Numbered from the stretch's first letter, positions 27,316 to 37,825 are shown. The stretch is DNA of 64,000 nucleotides from Ministeria vibrans ATCC 50519 (GCA_943704425.1 CALSCP010002792.1:1-64000); one strand, 5' to 3'. The notes: generated by a model not told the origin, from the letters alone. Numbers and translations: made by a program.

Positions 27316-29524
27316 CTACTCCTTGAGCTGCTTCAAAGCCACACGAATCTACGTCATGATTTTTAATTATTAGTAGAAGAAGAAGAAGACATTTCCAATT
27401 TATTATCAAATAAAAGCACAACAACAATAGTAACAATACTAATTACGGAGTACGAGGTATTAATAATTGAAAGTGGCGTTGAGAAAACCCAAGACGAATA
27501 ATAGATGGAGTAAATAATAATAATAATAATAATAATAATAGTAATAATATCATCAATTCTTACACGCCCAACGTGGCCCATTGGCATTTGAATGTGAAGG
27601 AGCTCGTCGTCCTGCATGCACATCAGCGCGCGGCCGTCGTAGTCATTCGTGCGCATGATATCCACACTGCTCTGAGGGATATCGACGGTGTTTTTGAGCC
27701 ATTCGCACACGTCATCAAGGCTCCATGTTGTCCAATCAACATTGTCTTGACGCAGTGGCGTTGGCAAACGCGCGCGGAACTGACGCAATATTTCCCGAGC
27801 ACACTTAAAGGCTTGACCAACCATGACAGGCTTCTGCTCGGGGTTCAGCCGAGCGGTCGCAATGTGTGTTGCCTTGTTCCCATTTTTGCGCATGTCGTTA
27901 AGCAGCTGCGTGAACTCGGAGGTGCAGTTCGGAATCTTGTCAATGCGCGAATGAAGTGTCTCTTGAGGGAACGCCGGCCCAAGGTGAAATTCAACGGCAG
28001 CTTCGCACATCACACGACAACACAGCAATGCAATAAGAGTCATTGACTCGCCATAGTACTCTTGACTCAGATTCATTGCCTAAAATAATAATGATAAGAT
28101 TTGTTAGACCGTCCTTAGGGCTATTTGCTCAAGTGACTTCACTTACCTTCGCAATTTGACCGAGGGGAGCTTGCACCAACTCCCCTGCTCCGGGGTTCCG
28201 AGAAATATCAAATAGAGTATTGCGAAGATCACACCATTCGTCGTGGGTAAACTCAGTCGGAGGATGAGGGTCGGTTGACATATCTACCGTCGAACCAGTC
28301 AGCAGAGGAGGGCGCACTTTGGTTGGTGTTGTGGACGTGATGGTGGCAGCAGGTTGGCGCATCGCAGAACGAGCGGGGCCCTTGCCTTTGACCTTGGCTG
28401 GGGACGGGACGCGGTTGGTGGGGAGGACGACTGGAAACGAGTTGAGTGTAGTGCTCGTCGCCGCCTCAAATGGTGGGGGGGGGTGAAAATATGTGCATGT
28501 ACCGGCGCGGAGATGCACACAGCTCACACCATACTTGCAAGTCCGAACTCCGGACTCTGGTGGCACTGCAGCACCCGTCACATTGCTCTTCTGCTTTGGC
28601 TCGCCGGCTGTTTTCACATGACCTCGCGCCTGGGAAGGGTGACGGGATTTGCACTTGTTTCGCGCCATGCCATCGTGGCACTCCCGCTCCAGTTTCACGT
28701 CGACAGCTGCAGGGCGTGATCCTTGCGCTGCGGCCGCTGCCGCCTCTTCTACTCGCTCTACCTTTCCAACTGGCATCCGTGCCTGCGCGAGAGATCATAA
28801 ATAAAATTATTATGTTATTTTCTTATTATAATAGGCATACCGGCTGCGGCGACAATGTATCCTTGATGAACTGAATTGTGGTTTGGTCCCCGGACTCCTT
28901 TGCCAATGTAAGCAAGGTTTTTTTGAACTTGGTCGTGATCGCTGTGCTGGCGCCGCCGTCCTCCACCAGCATACGACAGCACTCTGCGTGGCCCTTGTTT
29001 GCCGCCAGCATCAGTGCGGAGAGCCCGTCCTCATCAACCTTGTCAATGACGGCGCGCGAGGAACGCACAAGCTCTTGGACGGCGGAAATTGATCCGTTTG
29101 CGGCGGCAATGGAGAGAGGCGTGCGAAGTTTCTCATTTTTCGCATTGACATCCGCGTTGAGAGAAAGAAGGACTTTTACAACGTCTCCGTAGTCCAGAGA
29201 TGCCGCCAGCATCAATGGAGTCAGGTGACGATCGTTTTCGTGGTCGACCGGCAGAAGGTGTAGTTGAGAAAGGTCGTGGAGAACTTTCGCGTGGCGCCCC
29301 AGGACCAGCTTCACCACAATCGTGTTTCCATCGTCGTCTATCGTATTGACCAAGAGTGGAATGTCCTTGAGAGGGCGCGTCAGTTGGTTCAAGTCGCCCA
29401 TTTCCGCTGCCAGCATCAGCTAAGGGTTGACCAAAGGGAATTCAATTTATCGGAATATTATCGAGAAGCGGAGGCGCAAACTACAGACCTTGCGAAGTAC
29501 AGTGTCCGTTATTTGAGGCTCCAT
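27316..29524 (-). CDS. Ankyrin repeat - CCCH zinc finger - HEPN/DUF4145-like - SAM domain protein (~599 aa; exons 29524-29489, 29419-28841, 28782-28147, 28079-27564, 27348-27316)
   Basis: Ankyrin repeats (TPLMLAA..DVNAK, TPLSIAA, GLSALMLAA.KGH), CCCH finger CKYGVSCVHLRAGTCTYFHP, DUF4145-like CRVMCE...LHSRI...LNDMRKNGNKATH, and SAM WSLDDVCEWL...DGRALM..DELLHIQMPMGHVGR|IRVALKQL. All four introns are phase-0 GT-AG. Confidence 0.8.
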
Positions 29525-29906
29525 TTCGGGGTTCGGCAAGAATCAAGATAGGGTCGGCACGAAGTGTTCTTTTTTTTCTTGAGAAAAAAAAATAATGAGA
29601 ATAGTTATTAATTATTATTATTATTATTAATTACTCAAACATTAAATTTTCCGCTTCGTCACCGAACAGAAAATAATAACGGAGTTGATCGACATATCAA
29701 CCCTTCAGGCATCAGGATTCCAGCCCCGTCCCACTCGGACTTACTTTTAGGACCTTTGGGGGTCTCTCTAGACCATCGTTGGCGTCAAAATAAGTTTAGT
29801 CAGAGCGGAACGTTCAGTGTGTTTCATTGTTGGTATGATATCTTGTTTTTTAAAAAAAAAATATTATTCGGCACTCCCAACATTAAATTTCTTCTTTCTC
29901 CTCAGT
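29525..29906. promoter_or_regulatory. Putative bidirectional promoter between the ANK-HEPN gene and the helicase-RBR gene
   Basis: 382 bp between divergent ATGs, partly AT-rich. Inferred from geometry only. Confidence 0.45.
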
Positions 29907-32900
29907 ATGACTGACCGGGTCCCCCCTGAGCAGACTGTGGTGGTGAAAAAATGCAAAAGCGACGAAGATTTTGCTGCGCATATCGATTTGCGTCTGGTGA
30001 AAAGCTGCGCTCGTTCTGCCCACGGCGATTGCTACCTCAATTTCTACTGGGCTCCCGATGCAACCAGCGCAGCTGCAAAACTGTCTGGGGCCGGGTTCAA
30101 GGCGTACGTCAAGCCACAGACAGGGACGTACCAAGGCAAGGGCAACATTACGCTGATGGTTTCCAACACCGAGTTGCGCACAATCGCCCACCTCCTCCAA
30201 GGCGACACCGCCGCCAAAGACGTCGTTTTGCCGTTATCAAACGAGAAGACCCACGCCGTCTTCCTTGTTTTCAAGACGCGCCCTTCAGCCAATTTGTTGA
30301 AGAAAAAATTGTTGAACCTCAAGTACACTGTCGAACTCTACGATCCCGCTTCCCCCGGCTCCGCTTCTGCTTCCCATCAGTCTTGTGACGATGCTGGAGC
30401 GGGTTCCAACAAAACCGCTCAGCGCGAACGAACCGCGCACATGACAACATCAAAAAAATCAACCACTAAAAAGCCCGCCGCCGCCGCCGCCGCCGCCGCC
30501 CACACTCCTCCGGCCTATGCACCGCATCAGCACCCTCATACACGTCCTGCTGCTGCATCAGTCCAACCGTCGGCGTCACATCCGGTCGCTCGTGAGAGCC
30601 CTCCTGCTCTCCTGCAAGTGATGAATATTCCGCCAGCCAACGAAAGCGTCACCCGCATCCACAAACTAATTACTGACGCAGACATCTCTGTCCAGACCGT
30701 CTCTACAGATGGCGCCAACACCCATGGATTCTTTGCGTTTTCTTCGCCCGAGGACGCCGCTTTGGCGCAAGGCATAGTCCAGTCACTTGACCTCACCTGC
30801 ACGCTCAAACTCCGACAAGGAAAACGACCCGCACCGGCAAATCCCCGTCAAGGCGCTGCAGCTACTCATGCTGCCTCACCATCTACCTCTACGACAACTA
30901 AAAAAGCTACTACTACGACTACTACTGCTGCTGCTGCTCAACCTGCCCCTCGTCAGCCGGCCAAATCCTTTTCGCAAATCGTCAAGGAGGATGTGCCCGC
31001 TGCACTTACCGCCGCTCAAGAGCGTCTCGCTGCCCTGAACACCCAGCTGCAAAAGTTACAGCAAATTGCGCAACGCTCCCTTACTCTCAAGCAGGTTACG
31101 GACAACGTTGAGGGCCGCAAAGTTGTCGAGCAGCGCATCGACGAGATCGAGAAGGAACTTAACTCGTTCTGCAAGCGTCGCGACCAACTCCTGCATCGAC
31201 CACTCCGCGATTGTTTTGCCGCCAACGAGCTTGCGCGCGAATGCCGTCGTCTAAAGCAAGGACTTCCCATCTACGCCGTGCGCAACGAGATCATCGAGGG
31301 ACTTCAACAGAGTCGCTGCATTATTGTCGTGGGCGCCACTGGTTCAGGAAAGTGAGTTGACGCGAAAACTTTTTCACTTTTCAGTGCAATTTCTCAACCC
31401 CCCTCCCCTCTTCATTTAGATCCACACAGGTGGTCCAGTACATAGCTGACTCCCTGGCGCTTAGCCCGAACCAGTCCATCCTATGCTCGCAACCGCGCAA
31501 GTTGGCTGCAACGTCTCTCGCCGAGCGCGTCAACCAAGAGTACGGTGGCGACGCTCACGACGTTGTCTTTCAGGGGCGCTTGCTCGACCGAGACCCGCAG
31601 CATCCGCCCATTGTTTCCTTTGTGACGCACTCTTTGCTGCTGGACGAGCTCCGCGAAGACCCCAACCTGAGTCGTTTTGGCTGTGTCGTTGTTGACGAAG
31701 TGCACGAGCGCACGGTGAACGGCGACATTTGCATTGCTCTCCTGCGGTCGCTCTTCACTCGTCGCTCCGATTTTTACGTGGTGCTTACCTCGGCGACAAT
31801 GGACGCCCAGCGCTTCAGCGACTATTTCCACAGCGCCAAGATTTTCAACGTACCCGGCAAGACATTTCCCGTCCTCATCGAGTACGACTCGGGCAAGAAC
31901 TGCAGTAGCGACAATGACGGCTTCATCTCGAACGCGAAAGACCTCACTCCGCGTGCAGTTGATGCAGTCATGAAGATTCTTGTCAAGGAGAATGCTTTGG
32001 CGTCACGCGGCGCCGAGATCACCCACGCTCGCGACATTCTTGTCTTCTTACCGGGCGTTTACGAAATCACTGCCGCAATCCGATCCCTCGAGCATGACCT
32101 AAAAAAGTCCGCATTCCCCGACTTGGCTTTGTGCCTGCCCCTTCACGCCAAGCTTGAGTCGGCCGAGCAGAATCGAGCGCTTGCGCGGGCACCCGCGCAT
32201 AAGATCAAGGTGGTGTTTGCCACGACCATTGCCGAGACGTCGGTCACCATTGATGGCATCGGACACATTGTGGACACGGGCCTGGCAAACCGTCTCGTGT
32301 ACGACGAGAAGCGTGGCGTTGGCGTTGTGCGCCTTTCGCCCATCAGCCAGAGCGCCGCCAACCAACGTAGTGGTCGCGCCGGCCGCACTGCTCCCGGTGT
32401 CGCACATCGCCTGTACACAATGGACGCGTACGAGCGAATGGACACGAACGAAGTAGCCGAGATCATGCGACAACATCCTTCCGCCGCACTTCTCACCGTG
32501 ACGGGCTTTGGCGAGGATCTTCGTACTCTTAATCTGCTGAACAAGCCGACTGAGGACAGCATCGCCTCCGCTGAGGAGTATCTCGAGCTCATGGGCGCTT
32601 TTGACCGAACCACTGCAAGCTACAGCCGCGATGCCGATGGCCAGCCTCGCTATGAGATATCGCAGACGGGGCGAGTGATGCTGCGCATTCCCTTTCGCGC
32701 TCAAGAATCGCGTCTTGTCCTGGCGGGCTTTGAGCACGACGTGCTTGCAGAGTGCGCACTCATTGCCGCATTCTTCCAGAGTGACATTCCTCTGTTCCGT
32801 CGCGGCAACTCGCCCGCCGACGAGGAGGCGTTTGCTCTGGCGCGCTACAACTACCAGGATGAAGACGGCGATGCCTTTGTTGCCCTCGCCGTGTTTCGCG

Positions 32901-35886
32901 ACTGGATTGCGGCGGGAAAGTCGGCCGAGTGGCCCATGCAACACGGTGTGGCCAGAAAGCCGCTCCAGCGCGCGGTTTCACTCTACAACGAGGCACTCAG
33001 TGCTCTGGCCAATGCTCTTCCAGGCGCCGCAAAAGATCAGTGTGCTCGCGTGCGAAATCTCAGCAACGTCGACCTCGACGCGAAGATCGGCTCGGATAAG
33101 CGCCGCCTCATACGCCGAGCGCTTGCGACAGCCTACTGCAATAGCATCGCCGTCTTCAGTGGCTCCCAGTCAGCCGGATACCACTCCATGCGAGTTGGTG
33201 GCCAGGTGGTGCTGCACCCGTCCACGGCATTTTGTACCCAACAAGAAACTCCCCCGGTTGTCATGTATTGTCGTGTTGACGAAACTTCGCGCTGCTTTAT
33301 GAAGAACGTGATGCGCCTCGACGAGGCAGCGCTGCCCGAGCGCATTCGCTCTCGTCCCTTTGTGCGAAATGCTCTCAAGGACCGCCGTCTTACCTGTCGT
33401 GCCCTCGGCAAGCTTGGTAATTCCCTTTTGAAGTGCCTCAATGGACCGCGAGGCGAAACACTGCGCGAACTCGAGAGCCTCCACGATATTTGCATCTCAA
33501 TCGACTGGCACCACCACACGGTAGATGTGTGGTACGCGGACCCGGCGGGATTGGCGGGGTTCCAGAATAGCTTCCGTGACCTTCGCAGCTCGCTAGAGCT
33601 TGCCAACATTGACATTGATATGCCCTCCTCGAAGGTGCGTCTGTGCCTCAGCGCCGGTGGTCACCTTGAATCGTGCCTTTTCGAGGGCCAGTTCAACAGT
33701 GTCAACTTTACGGGATGCCCATCGCGACAGTCGATGCCGCTAGATGCGCAAGTGCGCGAGATTTTTGCGCCGGCTGGACGTGTGCTGAAACTGAACGTGT
33801 GGCCTTCCGCGACACCGACAAGCACTCGCAATGGCACAGTGACATTTGCAACGCCAGAACAGGCGGCGAGGTGCATCGACACTCTGAGCGGCCAGGTGAT
33901 GGAGTCGGGCATTCTACAGTGCACACAGGCGCAGGAGAAGCTTGTGTCGGGCACGTTGTTGCAGGGCTCCTCGGTGGTGGTGACCTGGAGCTACAGCGAG
34001 TGCACTGGAATGGCGTTTGCGAACGGACACACTGTTGAGATGGGCAAGATACTGCGCGAGTATGTGGATCGCTCGCAAAAAGGACATCCCGTCACTCTCA
34101 ACCGCCCCGGTCAACAATGCATTCCGCTGACGCTCAGGCCGAACAAGGACCCCGCGATGAAAAATTCTATTGTGATCTATAACCTACCTCCGGATGCCAC
34201 AATCCGCGAGATTGAAACTGCGTTGGGCGCCGGCTCCGGTGCCCTGACTATCACGATTCAGCGCAAGCCCATTAATGATTCTGCTACGATTGATGTGGCG
34301 ATGAATGTGGTCATGTTGCAGAGCCTGCTTGGGAGTGTCGGCGAGATCGTGTACCTGCAGACTGCTGTACCCGCCAACCTGACAAAGAACCCCAGTTTCT
34401 CCGCCATTGTCGCCTTCCGCTCGCCCACTTTTGCCCAGACGGCTCATGAGCTCTACGATGGCAAGCGCATTGACGGGCTTGGTATTTTGCCCATTGCCGT
34501 GAAACCTGACGTGTCGACCAAGTTCAAGATCCCCAGCCGTGTCTACACTGCCATGAGTCACCGCATCGCCGAGATCAAGGCAGACTCGCTCAAGACGTCG
34601 CAATGTCGCATTGGTGAGCCAATGGTGAATGGAAATTACACGACTGTGAAGGTGGATGGTGGGAGTCTTGATGAGATTCAGACGCTGAGCAAGACACTCA
34701 CAACCGTCTGTCAGGGACGACTGTTCGTGGTGCCAGACGAGATGCAGTCGGTTCTACGAGACTGTGTCATCAGCGGGGGTCCTTCCTCACGCACTCTCTT
34801 GAGCAAGTTGGAGAAGCAGACAGGTGCTGTGTCAACGATTCACATGCAGCGACTGCGCTTCTTTGGCACGGACGCTCAGATGGACTTGGCGTGCGATACA
34901 CTGATGAAGACTCTGACACGCATTGAGAAGACGAGATCGCAAGAGACACTGCGTCTCGAGCCGACTTGGCTCAAGGCGCTTGCAATGCAGAACGGTCGCA
35001 TCCAGCGCAAAGTGGAGAAAGAAATTGGCCGCGAGTTCCCCGACATCACCATCGCGTGGCGCTTTCGCAAACGAGCTGCGGACGTCATTGGCCCGCGCGA
35101 GCATGTGAAGGCGGCTTTGGGGCGTTTGCGTGCGGAGCTGGAGAACGAGACGCGAGCGCTAGGACTCGTGTCAGGCAAGACCAACGGTGGTGGTGCGGCT
35201 GATGCTGAAGTGCTCTGTCCCATTTGCATCTGTGAGCTCAGCGAAGACACCGTGCAATTACTCTTGTGTGGTCATGAGATGTGTCGGGAGTGCTTTGAGC
35301 AGATGGTCTCGTCGAACACATGCGAGTCTGAGGTGTCTCTCCCCATTACATGCCCAGTCGATGGGTGCAACAAGTCGCTCATCTCTACAGATCTGCAGCT
35401 GTACCTTACTGACGAGATGCTTGTGAGGCTCGGCAATGCGGTCCTTGCGAAACTGACGAGTGATTCGAGAAACGGTGTGGTCCACTGCCCGTCACCCAAC
35501 TGTACCGGCTATCTGTTTGCATCGCAAGGCGTTCGAACGCCAACGAGCCAGCCAGGCAAGACAGTGCTGGTGAGCCACTGCAGCGATTGTGACCATGACA
35601 TCTGCCTGGACTGCAGCAGCCAGGCGCACTCGAAACGGCTGTGTGGCGAGCCTGAAGACGCCGCTGTGCGAGCCATGCTGCTCAAACAAGGACTGCGCGA
35701 GTGCCGGTGCAAACAGATGATCCAAAAGACGGAAGGATGCAATCGCGTGACTTGCCGGTGTGGCGTCTCCGTGTGCTGGGTGTGTGGACGCCATTTTGAC
35801 TCATCGAGTGCATGCTACGCTCATTATGACGTGCGCACTGATCCATGCTATGCGAAATGTTTTACGGGGCTGTTGTACGACCAGTC

Positions 35887-35890
<4 letters not shown>
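29907..35890 (+). CDS. RRM-like - DEAH-box RNA helicase - RRM/KH-like - RBR E3 ubiquitin ligase fusion (plant DEAH11/12-like architecture), ~1970 aa, one intron 31352-31419
   Basis: GLPIY, GATGSGK|STQ, QPRKLAA, DEVHER, SAT, FLPG, TTIAETSVTI, QRSGRAGR. C-terminal RING1 (CPIC..CGH.MC.EC..CPVDGC), IBR (CPSPNC..CSDC..CLDC...H..C) and RING2 (CRC..KTEGCNRVTCRCG..CWVC). Confidence 0.9.

Positions 35891-35975
<85 letters not shown>
35889..35975. repeat. (GA)n microsatellite directly after the helicase stop codon
   Basis: Perfect GA run of ~86 bp followed by GAAA-rich repeats. Confidence 0.95.
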
Positions 35976-35981
<6 letters not shown>

Positions 35982-36142
35982 AGAAAGAAACAAAGAAAGA
36001 AAGAAAGAAAGAAACAAAGTGATAAAGAGAGAGAGAGGCAGAGACGAAGATGGAAAGACAGACAGAGAGAATAAAATCAACAATAGAATATTCTTACAAG
36101 TTTTATTGTTATTGTTTGTTTTGCATGAAAAAAAAGCGCGTC

Positions 36143-37825
36143 TCACTGACTTGTATTGTGAGAAACGATTGGGATCACAGGGGGACGCGTTGAACGAGCA
36201 CGACCGCGACCAGTTGGGGGCTCGCGATGAGTTCCACGACCGCGACCAGTTCCATGACCACTACCAATAGGGGTGTCGCGATCAGTTCCGCGACCGCGAC
36301 CAGTTGGAGTCTTGCTTGTGGACTCGCTGGCACTGGGCGTGGCCGATAGGTCCAGTGGAAGCACGGGGGGACGCGTTGAACGAGTACCACCGCGACCAGC
36401 TCCACGACCGCGACCAGTTGGGGTCTCGCTGGTGGACTCGCTGGCACTGGGCGTGGCCGATAGGTCCAGTGGAAGCACGGGAGGACGCGTTGAACGAGTA
36501 CCACCGCGACCAGCTCCACGACCGCGACCAGTTGGGGTCTTGCTGGTGGACTCGCTGGCACTGGGCGTGGCCGATAGGTCCAGTGGAAGCACGGGAGGAC
36601 GCGTTGACCGAGTACCACCGCGCCCAGCTCCACGACCGCGACCAGTTGGGGTCTCGCTGGTGGACTCGCTGGCACTGGGCGTGGCCGATAGGTCCAGTGG
36701 AAGCACGGGGGGACGCTGGTTGGCGTGTCGAACTTGACTTTGTCCATGTGTATGCCTTGGGGAGTGTGTGTTTTGAGATGGGAAAGCATAAGGATCGTGG
36801 TCAAGTGGAGTCGAAAGGGCAGCACCCGGTGAAACGAATGAATTGTCTGCACGCCACAAAGGCACTGGCTCCTTCCACTCGTACATGCTATCAAGCAGCT
36901 CTAGTCGAGCGGTTTCCTCGGCCAGCTTGGCTTCTACCCGAGCACGCACCTCTTCGGCTCTGCGGCTTTCCAGGTGCTCGGTAAGCGCGGCAAAGTCGGC
37001 AGGCGCAAGGGCAGCACGAGGGGTGAGCGTCGGGTGCACAATGAAGCAGTCAAGCATGGACAGCATGGAGAGCTGGAGCAGCACCTCGTCTTCGGCGTCG
37101 TCAAAGTCCACGTCAATCGGATAAAACATTTCCTTGGTGAGCATTCGACTGAAAATTTTGTTCTCTGTGCGCGGAGCAGAGATGATTGTGGAGCCGGGGC
37201 GGTCCGCAGTTCCATGTGAGTCAAAAAACAGCCAATGCGATGCAGTGCAGGCAACAAGGAACGACTGGGGCGAGCGAGTAATCAGTGCGCCCGCTGAGCC
37301 TGAAGCGCTATTCATGCTGTCGCGTTCAAGTGTAGACATGATGAGTTGAGCTGCAACAATGTGGAGAGGGGTGAGCCTGGGCCAGGAAGTAGAAGAAGGG
37401 AGGACGTACCAGTGTCGGGGTCGATGGTGAGATGCATTTCCCGCAGAACGCTCAAAGCGCTCTGGTACCGAGGCACCAGCTCCATAATTGCCATCGAGTC
37501 CTACGCAATGCACCATGGAGCGTAAATGGACAGCTTTTACCAGGTATGTTGGGCATACGGTGTGTTCGTCGCTTGTGAAATTTCCGCCTTGTCTCAAGAC
37601 TTCTTCAACAAGACCATCAGACACTTGTTTGGTCCGCAAACACAATAAGGCCGCTTCGAGTGCCATTACAGAGCATGAACTGATTGCATTCGCGGTGTAC
37701 TGCGTCGATCCGCTCATGTACACGTGAAAATGAGGAGAATATGTTTCGTGGTAGAACTTTAACGCCCTCTGCTTCACAGCAAACCGCGCGCTGCTTTCCT
37801 TTCGCGTCGACTCAATGTTCAACAC
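36143..37825 (-). CDS. Viral-tegument-like (VTD / peptidase C76-related) cysteine protease, putative deubiquitinase, with a repetitive RGG-rich tail; introns 37558-37501 and 37409-37351; 5' and 3' ends uncertain
   Basis: GSTQY...SSCSVMAL (Gln plus Cys at 37673-37675), EHT|DSMAIMELVPRY, ALITRSPQS and WLFFDSHG (D-x-H at 37214-37222). This Cys...FD[SP]H arrangement is typical of herpesvirus tegument DUBs and their cellular relatives. Confidence 0.68.
   Translation of the reverse strand: MLNIESTRKESSARFAVKQRALKFYHETYSPHFHVYMSGSTQYTANAISSCSVMALEAALLCLRTKQVSDGLVEEVLRQGGNFTSDEHTVCPTYLVKAVHLRSMVHCVGLDGNYGAGASVPERFERSAGNASHHRPRHWYVLPSSTSWPRLTPLHIVAAQLIMSTLERDSMNSASGSAGALITRSPQSFLVACTASHWLFFDSHGTADRPGSTIISAPRTENKIFSRMLTKEMFYPIDVDFDDAEDEVLLQLSMLSMLDCFIVHPTLTPRAALAPADFAALTEHLESRRAEEVRARVEAKLAEETARLELLDSMYEWKEPVPLWRADNSFVSPGAALSTPLDHDPYAFPSQNTHSPRHTHGQSQVRHANQRPPVLPLDLSATPSASESTSETPTGRGRGAGRGGTRSTRPPVLPLDLSATPSASESTSKTPTGRGRGAGRGGTRSTRPPVLPLDLSATPSASESTSETPTGRGRGAGRGGTRSTRPPVLPLDLSATPSASESTSKTPTGRGRGTDRDTPIGSGHGTGRGRGTHREPPTGRGRARSTRPPVIPIVSHNTSQ
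36170..36720 (-). repeat. Coding tandem repeat, 120-bp/40-aa unit, ~4 copies plus a degenerate copy
   Basis: Unit RPPVLPLDLSATPSASESTS(E/K)TPTGRGRGAGRGGTRST recurs with a 120-nt period. Confidence 0.95.

What the first reader, a model, noticed from the sequence alone, without database searches (positions are those of the whole stretch)
27316..37825. Candidate RNA-sensing innate-immune island: HEPN RNase + DEAH helicase/RBR E3 ligase + tegument-like deubiquitinase
Seen: three non-housekeeping genes sit contiguously between the housekeeping genes PMM and WDR33. The ANK-CCCH-HEPN-SAM gene and the RRM-DEAH-RBR gene are divergent with 382 bp between ATGs, and the VTD-type protease converges on the ligase. 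Known: HEPN domains are effector RNases in biological conflict systems (RNase L KEN, Cas13, abortive-infection proteins); helicase sensors coupled to ubiquitin signalling underlie animal antiviral immunity; RBR ligases write ubiquitin and VTD enzymes remove it. Inference: a co-regulated sensor (helicase, RRM, CCCH), writer (RBR), eraser (DUB) and effector (HEPN) module against viral or foreign RNA, which I do not recognise as described. Caveat: the helicase/DUB boundary is a (GA)n tract, and this assembly appears to misjoin at such tracts elsewhere.
Basis: partly seen in the sequence, partly recalled or inferred. Interest (0 to 1): 0.85.

Follow-up and report, generated by a model that had tools for sequence, protein, structure and literature searches.

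The report
Helicase-ubiquitin ligase beside its deubiquitinase, plus HEPN gene
Three real neighbouring genes in a marine protist: an RNA-helicase/ubiquitin-ligase and a rare herpes-tegument-like deubiquitinase that almost certainly work as a pair, next to a candidate RNA-cutting (HEPN) protein whose link to them, like any immune role, remains unproven.

Summary
Gene A (599 codons) is ANK + one CCCH-like finger + a DUF4145-type HEPN domain + SAM. Gene B (1971 codons) is a DEAH helicase with OB fold, RRM and C-terminal RBR. Gene C is a VTD deubiquitinase with a repeat tail. The 382 bp between the A and B start codons, the convergent B/C pair and the (GA)n tract are all as described.

VTD identity is firm: profile hit to Wc-VTD1 at E 3.7e-12, solved VTDs top the Foldseek list, and the Gln/Cys and Asp-x-His motifs are intact. 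HEPN identity is moderate: sub-threshold Pfam hits, hhalign probability 87%, intact R-x2-G-N-x3-H signature, poor 3D model.

New here: a VTD-RBR fusion protein from another organism (P0126) maps with its RBR half onto gene B, by far the best RBR match in the genome. Its VTD half maps onto gene C, 1.6 kb away. B and C are therefore a likely writer/eraser pair. VTD-RBR fusions were already published for Agaricomycetes.

Not supported: conserved three-gene synteny (six distant loci checked), any specific tie of gene A to the pair, and any immune role.

Contiguity across the (GA)n tract could not be confirmed, because no contig from four runs bridges it. The first-stage scan had already noted each of these genes on this same stretch.

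The parts
27316..29524 (-). Gene A, 5 exons (29524-29489, 29419-28841, 28782-28147, 28079-27564, 27348-27316), 599 codons: ANK repeats, CCCH-like finger, DUF4145-type HEPN, SAM
   Evidence: Splice sites and frames read. Pfam ANK and SAM_2.
28841..29419 (-). Exon 2: ankyrin repeats
   Evidence: Ank_2 6.8e-21, Ank 8.5e-21
28147..28782 (-). Exon 3: Ala/Pro-rich linker with one C-x5-C-x7-C-x3-H pattern. Its C-terminal ~45 aa are conserved with the paralog, as an N-terminal extension of the HEPN domain.
   Evidence: Pattern search; no Pfam hit; paralog ORFs.
27765..28079 (-). DUF4145-type HEPN domain, with the signature R-x2-G-N-x3-H at 27864-27890 (R63..H71 of the exon-4 ORF)
   Evidence: Pfam DUF4145 E 0.005; custom DUF4145 HMM 21.4 bits; hhalign probability 87%; invariant R21, E25, R63, G66, N67 and H71 with the paralog.
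27316..27728 (-). SAM domain (end of exon 4 plus the 10-codon last exon, with a 215-nt AT-rich intron between them)
   Evidence: SAM_2 3.7e-6, 27.4 bits against a cut-off of 20.5; PDB TEL/ETV6 SAM hits.
29525..29906 (.). 382-bp divergent intergenic region between the start codons of genes A and B
29907..35890 (+). Gene B, 2 exons (29907-31351, 31420-35890; a 68-nt intron splits motif I, GSGK|STQ), 1971 codons: DEAH helicase, OB fold, RRM, RBR E3 ligase
   Evidence: Pfam; intron; full-length homologs P0001 and P0002.
33746..33901 (+). RRM_1 domain, located after the helicase/OB module
   Evidence: RRM_1 9.2e-11
35192..35887 (+). RING1-IBR-RING2 (RBR) module with a C-terminal tail shared with the VTD-fused RBR of P0126
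   Evidence: IBR 3.3e-10; BLASTP 80.5 bits to P0126; best genome-wide match of the P0126 RBR, 72.5 bits against 32.1 for the next.
35889..36070 (.). (GA)n microsatellite filling most of the 252-bp gap between the two stop codons
   Evidence: TRF; bridged by no contig; this repeat type matches at least 80 other places in the genome.
36143..37825 (-). Gene C: VTD-type cysteine deubiquitinase. First ATG at 37717; the frame is open to 37825.
36935..37729 (-). VTD catalytic domain: Gln42 and Cys51 (37673-37675), Asp202-Ser-His204 (37214-37222), and a disordered 40-aa insertion (residues 112-151)
   Evidence: Invariant columns in A1; 8adb_A at E 3.7e-12; AF2 mean pLDDT 72, catalytic-core blocks about 85-93; Foldseek top hits 8adc, 8adb, 2j7q and 8add.
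36277..36716 (-). 3.9 copies of a 114-bp (38-aa) repeat in the tail of gene C. Each unit carries a P-L-D-L-S motif and an RGRG(A)GRGG tract.
   Evidence: TRF 96% matches; translation; roughly 4-7-fold contig depth over the repeat.

Best explanation
Genes B and C are a ubiquitin writer/eraser pair centred on RNA. Gene B couples a DEAH/RHA RNA helicase (with OB fold and RRM) to an RBR E3 ligase. Gene C is a deubiquitinase of the fungal/protist/bacterial VTD subgroup, whose tested members are K6-directed, and it carries an RGG-repeat tail.

In other organisms the same VTD and the same kind of RBR sit in one polypeptide. Here they are two convergent neighbouring genes, and the RBR is attached to a helicase.

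Inferred mechanism: the helicase/RRM part selects an RNA or RNP substrate, the RBR ubiquitinates it or itself (perhaps with K6 chains), and the VTD trims or resets the mark.

Gene A is a separate, probably catalytically competent DUF4145-type HEPN RNase candidate with ankyrin and SAM (polymerising) domains. It is tied to the pair only by head-to-head position and by the recurrence of CCCH fingers in VTD-RBR and helicase-RBR proteins elsewhere.

Shown: domain identities, the fusion-versus-neighbour relation, and the intact catalytic motifs. Inferred: chain type, RNA substrates, any role of gene A in the pair, and any defence role.
For: VTD identity:
- phmmer against 1.84 billion representatives gave 8 hits, each with a Cys-box and a His-box stretch.
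- Invariant Q42, C51 and F-D-S-H 201-204 in the alignment.
- The alignment profile hits Wc-VTD1 (8adb_A) at E 3.7e-12.
- The Foldseek top six rows are all VTDs or M48.
- The Asp-x-His active site is described as the family hallmark, and the fungal/protist/bacterial subgroup as K6-directed, in PMC9741609.

Pairing of B and C:
- 3 of the 8 VTD homologs (P0124-P0126) carry a C-terminal RBR. Agaricomycete VTDs are RBR fusions (PMC9741609).
- Searching this whole genome with P0126 puts its RBR half on gene B (72.5 bits, E 2e-19; next RBR 32.1 bits) and its VTD half on gene C (E 2.5e-5).
- The genome has about 13 IBR loci and one VTD. Chance adjacency of the VTD to any RBR gene is therefore roughly 0.3%. 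This is my estimate and assumes about 3 kb per gene.

Gene B: helicase motifs and Pfam domains. Full-length homologs have the same architecture, and one carries KH_DEAH11.

Gene A HEPN:
-.
- The R-to-H spacing is the same as the catalytic R146/H154 of the DUF4145 RNase RAZR (PMC13017515).
Against: - No homolog locus examined repeats the arrangement.
- Physical linkage of B and C rests on the assembly alone, because every contig breaks at the (GA)n tract.
- Gene B's RBR is not uniformly closest to VTD-fused RBRs: P0125 scores 44.7 bits and P0124 33.9, against 56-58 for the helicase-fused ones.
- K6 specificity, RNA substrates and expression are untested.
- The HEPN model is poor (pLDDT 54) and the Pfam hit is below threshold.
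- Intergenic gaps here are all 250-480 bp, so head-to-head spacing alone does not link A to B.
Confidence: 0.6

Rival explanations
1. Full first-reader model: a co-regulated three-gene innate-immune island. The helicase, RRM and CCCH parts sense viral or foreign RNA, the RBR writes ubiquitin, the VTD erases it, and the SAM-polymerising HEPN RNase executes.
For: - All three proteins carry RNA-related parts: RGG tail, RRM plus DEAH, CCCH-like finger plus HEPN.
- DUF4145 HEPN domains are known mainly from prokaryotic defence systems (PMC3710099), and RAZR is one activated by assembly (PMC13017515).
- CCCH fingers recur at the N-termini of VTD-RBR (P0124, P0125) and helicase-RBR (P0002) proteins.
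- Relatives of the helicase carry other effector-like domains such as ART.
- Helicase-E3 immune proteins exist in animals (ZNFX1, listed).
Against: - No conserved neighbourhood at six loci.
- No lineage-specific expansion: one gene A paralog and a single VTD.
- No PADLOC hit.
- The spacing is ordinary for this genome.
- There are no expression or infection data.
Confidence: 0.13
2. Chance neighbours: three unrelated genes that merely lie side by side in a compact genome.
For: - Gene density is about one gene per 3 kb, with short gaps everywhere.
- Synteny was absent at all six loci of distant homologs examined.
- Gene A has no specific tie to the others.
Against: The only VTD gene in the genome lies next to the one RBR that best matches the RBR of VTD-RBR fusion proteins. 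This is very unlikely by chance given the published fusions.
Confidence: 0.2
3. Assembly artefact: genes B and C are joined only by a misassembly at the (GA)n tract.
For: - No contig from four runs, in four different studies, bridges 35881-36052.
- (GA)n tracts are very common in this genome.
- Earlier first-stage notes suspect misjoins at such tracts elsewhere in this assembly (untested).
Against: - Both genes end with complete, homologous C-termini just outside the tract.
- The unique flanks occur on no other contig.
- A random join would be unlikely to bring a VTD next to its matching RBR.
Confidence: 0.07

Closest known systems
VTD (viral tegument-like) deubiquitinases, K6-directed subgroup (Wc-VTD1, Nf-VTD, Si-VTD, Sl-VTD), and the Agaricomycete VTD-RBR fusion proteins (Erven et al. 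2022, PMC9741609)
   Same: - Sequence-profile and fold match to Wc-VTD1.
- Gln/Cys box and the hallmark Asp-x-His motif.
- A long C-terminal helix after the core, as in the K6-specific members.
- Association with an RBR ligase.
   Different: - The VTD is a stand-alone gene, convergent on the RBR gene rather than fused to it.
- The partner RBR is attached to a DEAH helicase.
- The core has a 40-residue disordered insertion.
- The tail is four 38-aa repeats with P-L-D-L-S and RGG motifs.
- Linkage specificity is untested.
'Helicase' RBR subfamily / DEAH11-DEAH12-like proteins (Marin 2010, PMC2904391; Pfam KH_DEAH11)
   Same: DEAH/RHA helicase core with OB_NTP_bind, followed by nucleic-acid-binding modules and a C-terminal RING1-IBR-RING2. 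Full-length homologs were found (P0001 at 97% coverage, P0002).
   Different: - Only 25-28% identity to the nearest relatives found.
- Pfam sees an RRM_1 rather than a KH_DEAH11 domain.
- There is a long low-complexity N-terminal region.
- RING2 starts with C-x-C where P0126 has C-x2-C.
DUF4145-type HEPN RNases, e.g. the zinc-finger/DUF4145 defence protein RAZR (PMC13017515); architectural analogy to RNase L (ANK-pseudokinase-KEN)
   Same: - R-x2-G-N-x3-H signature with the same R-to-H spacing as RAZR R146/H154.
- A helix-1 R..E pair.
- An all-helical domain of about 100 aa.
- A metal-finger-like element upstream and a self-associating domain in the same protein.
- Ankyrin repeats N-terminal, as in RNase L.
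   Different: - It is eukaryotic, whereas DUF4145 is listed for bacteria, archaea and dsDNA viruses (PMC3710099).
- It scores below Pfam's threshold.
- It has no kinase or KEN domain, so it is not an RNase L family member.
- The C-terminal SAM domain is not described for the family.
- RNase activity is untested.
Animal helicase-plus-E3 antiviral proteins (e.g. ZNFX1; RIG-I with its E3 partners)
   Same: An RNA helicase coupled to ubiquitin ligation.
   Different: Different helicase superfamily branch and different E3 type. No homology is claimed and no immune evidence exists here.

Membership tests
VTD deubiquitinases (MEROPS C76-like) | Papain-like fold closest to solved VTD or tegument DUB structures | tested here: met
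   Foldseek: 8adc_B E 2.5e-7, 8adb_A 2.6e-6, M48 2j7q 8.8e-4, 8add 4e-3. MCF and AvrPphB follow, as the paper describes. Model mean pLDDT 72, catalytic-core blocks about 85-93.
VTD deubiquitinases (MEROPS C76-like) | Sequence-profile relationship to an experimentally characterised VTD | tested here: met
   The A1 profile hits Wc-VTD1 (8adb_A) at E 3.7e-12 over 157 profile positions. The identity of the entry was checked in PMC9741609.
VTD deubiquitinases (MEROPS C76-like) | Catalytic Cys and the invariable Asp-x-His motif | tested here: met
   C51 and D202-S-H204 are invariant across all 9 sequences. The motif is described in PMC9741609.
VTD deubiquitinases (MEROPS C76-like) | Isopeptidase activity and linkage preference (K6 for this subgroup) | not testable with these tools
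   Needs a di-ubiquitin panel or Ub-probe assay. The model has a C-terminal helix (residues 278-309) where K6-type members have alpha9; this is only suggestive.
Helicase-RBR E3 ligases (DEAH11/12-like) | DEAH/RHA helicase core with OB_NTP_bind | tested here: met
   DEAD, Helicase_C and OB_NTP_bind in Pfam. Motif I GSGK|STQ across the intron. DEVH and QRSGRAGR motifs in the translation.
Helicase-RBR E3 ligases (DEAH11/12-like) | C-terminal RING1-IBR-RING2 with the catalytic Cys of RING2 | tested here: met
   RING and two IBR stretches in Pfam. Full-length RBR alignment to P0126, including the G-C-N catalytic loop.
Helicase-RBR E3 ligases (DEAH11/12-like) | KH_DEAH11 domain between helicase and RBR | tested here: not met
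   Not reported for gene B at E <= 0.1; RRM_1 is found instead. It is present in homolog P0002.
HEPN superfamily, DUF4145 family (PF13643) | Match to the family model above Pfam's gathering score | tested here: not met
   17.3 bits against a cut-off of 23.1 for gene A, and 13.3 bits for the paralog. It is the only Pfam family reported for each.
HEPN superfamily, DUF4145 family (PF13643) | Profile-profile similarity to bona fide members, above controls | tested here: met
   hhalign of gene A plus its paralog against the de-duplicated DUF4145 hits from 30 bacterial loci: probability 87%, score 36.4. The best of 30 column shuffles scored 21.9 and the reversed alignment 18.4. A custom HMM gave 21.4 and 21.1 bits.
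HEPN superfamily, DUF4145 family (PF13643) | Catalytic signature (R ... N ... H; in DUF4145, R-x2-G-N-x3-H) | tested here: met
   R63, G66, N67 and H71 are invariant in both paralogs. The same pattern occurs in most of the bacterial members. The spacing equals RAZR R146/H154.
HEPN superfamily, DUF4145 family (PF13643) | Four-helix HEPN fold | tested here: inconclusive
   The AF2 model is all-helical but has pLDDT 54. The Foldseek top rows are HEPN proteins (AbiV, AF_0298, ST0689) but at E >= 0.5. VIA is unspecific, with Z < 7.
RNase L / Ire1 (KEN) family | Kinase or pseudokinase domain followed by a KEN domain | tested here: not met
   No kinase or KEN hit in any exon of gene A. Only the ANK-plus-HEPN layout is analogous.
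CCCH zinc finger | Match to a CCCH model, or canonical C-x7-8-C-x4-5-C-x3-H spacing | tested here: inconclusive
   No Pfam hit even at E <= 10. One non-canonical C-x5-C-x7-C-x3-H pattern.
Conserved defence/immune gene island | The same gene neighbourhood recurs in other genomes | tested here: not met
   Six loci around VTD or helicase homologs (L005-L008, L048, L049) have no DUF4145-like or gene-A-like ORF. None has a VTD next to a helicase-RBR. Near relatives of this organism could not be reached.
Conserved defence/immune gene island | Induction by, or protection against, virus or foreign RNA | not testable with these tools
   No run on record as RNA holds the stretch.

The most novel reading that the evidence does not exclude
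A eukaryotic three-gene RNA-triggered defence or surveillance module. A DEAH helicase/RBR senses aberrant or foreign RNA and writes (K6?) ubiquitin. A dedicated VTD deubiquitinase resets it. A SAM-polymerising, ankyrin-bearing DUF4145 HEPN RNase, a prokaryote-type abortive-infection effector domesticated in a protist, executes RNA cleavage on assembly.
Probability: 0.12. Interest if true: 0.85.

Novelty: new variant of a known kind. Interest (0 to 1): 0.5.

Why it matters
The 2022 paper that defined the VTD family calls the biological role of the K6-specific VTD deubiquitinases 'enigmatic'. Here, the single VTD of a small protist genome sits beside the one RBR ligase that matches the RBR of VTD-RBR fusion proteins. 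That RBR is welded to an RNA helicase with an RRM, and the VTD carries an RGG tail.

This points the VTD/RBR pair towards RNA or RNP substrates and gives a concrete, testable pair of enzymes: chain type written, chain type erased, and RNA dependence.

Separately, gene A and its paralog would be eukaryotic members of DUF4145. A 2013 survey lists that HEPN family only for bacteria, archaea and dsDNA viruses. Here it appears in an ANK-finger-HEPN-SAM layout, which would show a prokaryotic conflict RNase domain recruited into a eukaryotic signalling-type architecture.

Tried and rejected
Searches that found nothing:
- Word-indexed homolog searches for the VTD domain and the HEPN exon.
- phmmer of single sequences against PDB chains for the VTD. 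A 2-sequence HEPN profile against PDB gave only chance rows.
- PADLOC for both domains; NCBIfam gave only a chance-level row (E 0.1) for the HEPN exon.
Synteny in near relatives could therefore not be tested.

Inconclusive or rejected results:
- The Pfam DUF4145 search of the own genome returned only a spurious 15-bit hit with an internal stop on another contig (L004). I rejected it.
- The protein-atlas look-alikes for the HEPN part were unnamed bacterial clusters, with one DUF4145 cluster at 0.86. This is a lead only.
- AF2 of the HEPN exon with a 2-sequence alignment gave pLDDT 54, so the fold searches on it are not decisive.

Candidate introns inside the gene C ORF:
- The GT..AG stretch at about 37557-37500 encodes residues that align with homologs, so it is coding.
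- The 59-nt GT..AG stretch at about 37408-37350 would break the frame and is GC-rich, unlike this genome's AT-rich introns.
- I therefore read the 40-residue insertion as coding, unconfirmed.

Reads and spliced models:
- Read laying could not bridge the (GA)n tract.
- All searches and folds were run exon by exon, by reference. The first conserved ~45 residues upstream of the HEPN domain (end of exon 3) were therefore never modelled together with exon 4.

Full report
**What is there.** The window comes from a 29.7-Mb eukaryotic genome in 2,860 contigs. Near-identical DNA occurs in seawater and algae metagenomes. Exons are GC-rich and introns are short and AT-rich.

Between a phosphomannomutase gene (Pfam PMM 6e-36) and a WD40 gene with a proline-rich tail lie three genes.

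Gene A (- strand) has five exons with GT..AG introns and consistent frames: 29524-29489, 29419-28841, 28782-28147, 28079-27564 and 27348-27316, giving 599 codons.

Gene B (+ strand) has two exons, 29907-31351 and 31420-35890, giving 1971 codons. Its 68-nt intron splits helicase motif I (GSGK|STQ).

Gene C (- strand) is one open frame from 37825 to 36143, with its first ATG at 37717.

The A and B start codons are 382 bp apart. B and C converge with 252 bp between their stop codons, most of it a (GA)n tract at 35889-36070.

**Gene C is a VTD deubiquitinase.** Pfam, PDB sequence search and the word-indexed protein search all found nothing. The genome has no second copy.

An exhaustive phmmer run against 1.84 billion representatives found eight distant relatives. 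Each matched in two stretches, around a Cys box and a His box. In their alignment, Q42, S49, C51, E57, P186, F201-D202-S203-H204 and G211 are invariant.

A profile of that alignment hits PDB 8adb_A at E 3.7e-12. That entry is Wc-VTD1 from the paper that defined the VTD family (PMC9741609).

An AlphaFold model built on the alignment has mean pLDDT 72; the blocks around the catalytic core reach about 85-93, and a 40-residue insertion is disordered. Foldseek against the PDB lists Wc-VTD1, murine cytomegalovirus M48 and the Helitron VTD first. The MCF and AvrPphB proteases follow, the same neighbours the paper reports.

The Asp-x-His arrangement is the family hallmark. The closest solved relative belongs to the fungal/protist/bacterial subgroup that the paper shows to be K6-directed. 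Linkage preference of gene C itself remains an inference.

The tail holds 3.9 copies of a 114-bp unit at 96% identity. Each unit encodes a P-L-D-L-S motif and an RGG-type tract.

**Gene B is a helicase-RBR ligase of a known kind.** Pfam finds DEAD, Helicase_C, OB_NTP_bind, RRM_1, RING and two IBR stretches.

The best homologs are only 25-28% identical, but they cover the whole length and share the architecture (P0001, P0002). P0002 carries Pfam's KH_DEAH11 domain. The 'Helicase' RBR subfamily is described in PMC2904391. The RRM that Pfam detects lies after the helicase, not before it.

**B and C are linked by a fusion elsewhere.** Three of the eight VTD relatives (P0124, P0125, P0126) carry a C-terminal RBR. 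The VTD paper states that most Agaricomycetes encode a VTD fused to an RBR ligase.

Among everything fetched, gene B's RBR aligns best with the RBR of the VTD fusion P0126. The score is 80.5 bits at 30% identity over all 231 residues, including a shared C-terminal tail. The helicase-fused RBRs score 56-58 bits.

The reverse test is the strongest. I searched the whole 29.7-Mb genome in six frames with P0126:
- Its RBR half lands on gene B at 72.5 bits (E 2e-19). The next-best RBR scores 32.1 bits.
- Its VTD half lands on gene C (E 2.5e-5), 1.6 kb away.

The genome has about 13 IBR loci and one VTD. At roughly one gene per 3 kb, the chance that the VTD's neighbour is any RBR gene is about 0.3%. 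The chance that it is this particular RBR is about ten times lower. This is my rough estimate.

I therefore read B and C as a writer/eraser pair, a split-gene version of the known fusion in which the RBR is attached to an RNA helicase.

**Gene A.** Ankyrin repeats (6.8e-21) and SAM_2 (3.7e-6, above cut-off) are clear.

The region between them gives DUF4145 as its only Pfam family, below threshold (E 0.005). A paralog on contig C2445 (28% identity) independently gives the same family at E 0.09.

To test this further, I collected DUF4145 hits from 30 bacterial loci with the Pfam model. Most show the R-x2-G-N-x3-H signature.
- An HMM built from them, after removing near-duplicates, scores gene A at 21.4 bits and the paralog at 21.1 bits.
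- hhalign of the two-sequence alignment against the bacterial alignment gives probability 87% and score 36.4.
- The best of 30 column-shuffled controls scored 21.9, and the reversed alignment 18.4.

R21, E25, R63, G66, N67 and H71 are invariant between the paralogs. The R-to-H spacing equals that of R146/H154 in RAZR, a zinc-finger/DUF4145 defence RNase in which these residues are required and which cleaves ssRNA (PMC13017515). DUF4145 is placed in the HEPN superfamily and listed for bacteria, archaea and dsDNA viruses (PMC3710099).

The 3D test failed to decide. The model has pLDDT 54. HEPN proteins top the Foldseek list, but only at E >= 0.5. VIA is unspecific.

The 'CCCH' call rests on a single non-canonical pattern with no Pfam support.

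I put HEPN/DUF4145 membership at about 0.8 and catalytic competence as plausible. Gene A is not an RNase L family member, because it has no kinase or KEN domain.

**Is it an island?** I inspected ±10 kb around one helicase-RBR homolog (P0002), one helicase-ART relative (P0005) and four VTD homologs (P0121, P0125, P0126, P0127). This used both the recorded Pfam hits and my own HMMs on all open frames.
- None has a DUF4145-like or gene-A-like frame.
- None has a VTD next to a helicase-RBR.

Near relatives of the organism could not be reached.

The 382-bp divergent gap is no shorter than the other gaps here: 336 bp from gene A to PMM, 252 bp from B to C, and about 480 bp from C to the WD40 gene. 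It therefore carries no weight for co-regulation.

What does tie A loosely to the pair is the recurrence of CCCH fingers. There are two at the N-terminus of each of the VTD-RBR proteins P0124 and P0125, and four in the helicase-RBR protein P0002. In addition, all three local proteins have RNA-related parts. This is suggestive only. Nothing bears on viruses or foreign RNA.

**Contiguity.** In four runs from four different studies, every contig stops at 35880 and resumes at 36053 or later. The tract is not bridged, as expected for short-read contigs.

Against a misjoin:
- Gene B ends with a C-terminal tail homologous to that of P0126.
- Gene C has its own stop codon 73 bp outside the tract.
- The unique flanks exist on no other contig.
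- A random join would hardly pair a VTD with its matching RBR.

One run guessed to be RNA (X7) has a 5.5-kb contig over gene B at depth 37, but only patchy depth 1-5 over gene C. This would fit transcription of both at different levels, but the run's nature is unconfirmed.

**Limits.** The conserved ~45 residues at the end of gene A exon 3, which the paralog shares, were therefore not modelled together with the HEPN exon.

**Verdict.** The domain calls for VTD and helicase-RBR are firm, the HEPN call is probable, and the CCCH call is weak. The writer/eraser link is supported by new evidence but extends a published association. The immune-island reading is not supported and remains a minority possibility.

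Noticed in passing
G000:C2445 (L002:588-1842, - strand): A paralog of gene A's C-terminal half: the same conserved pre-HEPN segment, a DUF4145-like domain (signature L-R-E-F-G-N-R-G-D-H) and a SAM-like exon. Upstream is a Glu/Arg/Lys-rich coiled-coil stretch, and no ANK repeats or finger are visible. Its intron lies 6 codons downstream of gene A's. The contig is only 2.2 kb, so there is no context.
   Followed up: partly
L048:10001-19990 and proteins P0005, P0021: Relatives of the gene B helicase in uncultured eukaryotes carry an ADP-ribosyltransferase (PF01129 ART) domain. One of them (P0005) has a separate IBR/Rcat_RNF216 gene 2.3 kb downstream. This helicase clade therefore seems to combine with different protein-modifying effector domains.
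   Followed up: partly
L007:1-20195: The VTD homolog P0127 lies on a 38-kb metagenome contig. That contig is packed with ORFs without Pfam hits, apart from a weak Peptidase_C48 (SUMO/Ub-like protease) hit 650 bp upstream. It may be a giant-virus or other mobile-element context.
   Followed up: no
window:35889-36070 and at least 80 other places in G000: (GA)n/(GAAA)n-type microsatellites of 100-200 bp are very frequent in this genome, with over 80 matches to this tract alone. All short-read contigs break at them, which makes them natural weak points of the assembly.
   Followed up: partly
window:36200-36800: Contig depth over the 114-bp repeat array is 4-7 times that of the flanks in two runs, as expected for about 4 collapsed copies. 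An A>G difference at 36473 is seen in two runs. Copy number may vary between strains.
   Followed up: no
window:37373-37492 (- strand): A 40-residue insertion in the VTD core (residues 112-151) is absent from all eight homologs and is disordered in the model. The possible RNA run X7 has no contig over 37334-37557. It could be a lineage-specific loop or something spliced out; this is unresolved.
   Followed up: partly
window:27349-27563 (- strand): The last intron of gene A (215 nt) is a very AT-rich stretch with (ATT)n runs. It stays open in frame for 66 codons and therefore extends the naive ORF misleadingly.
   Followed up: yes
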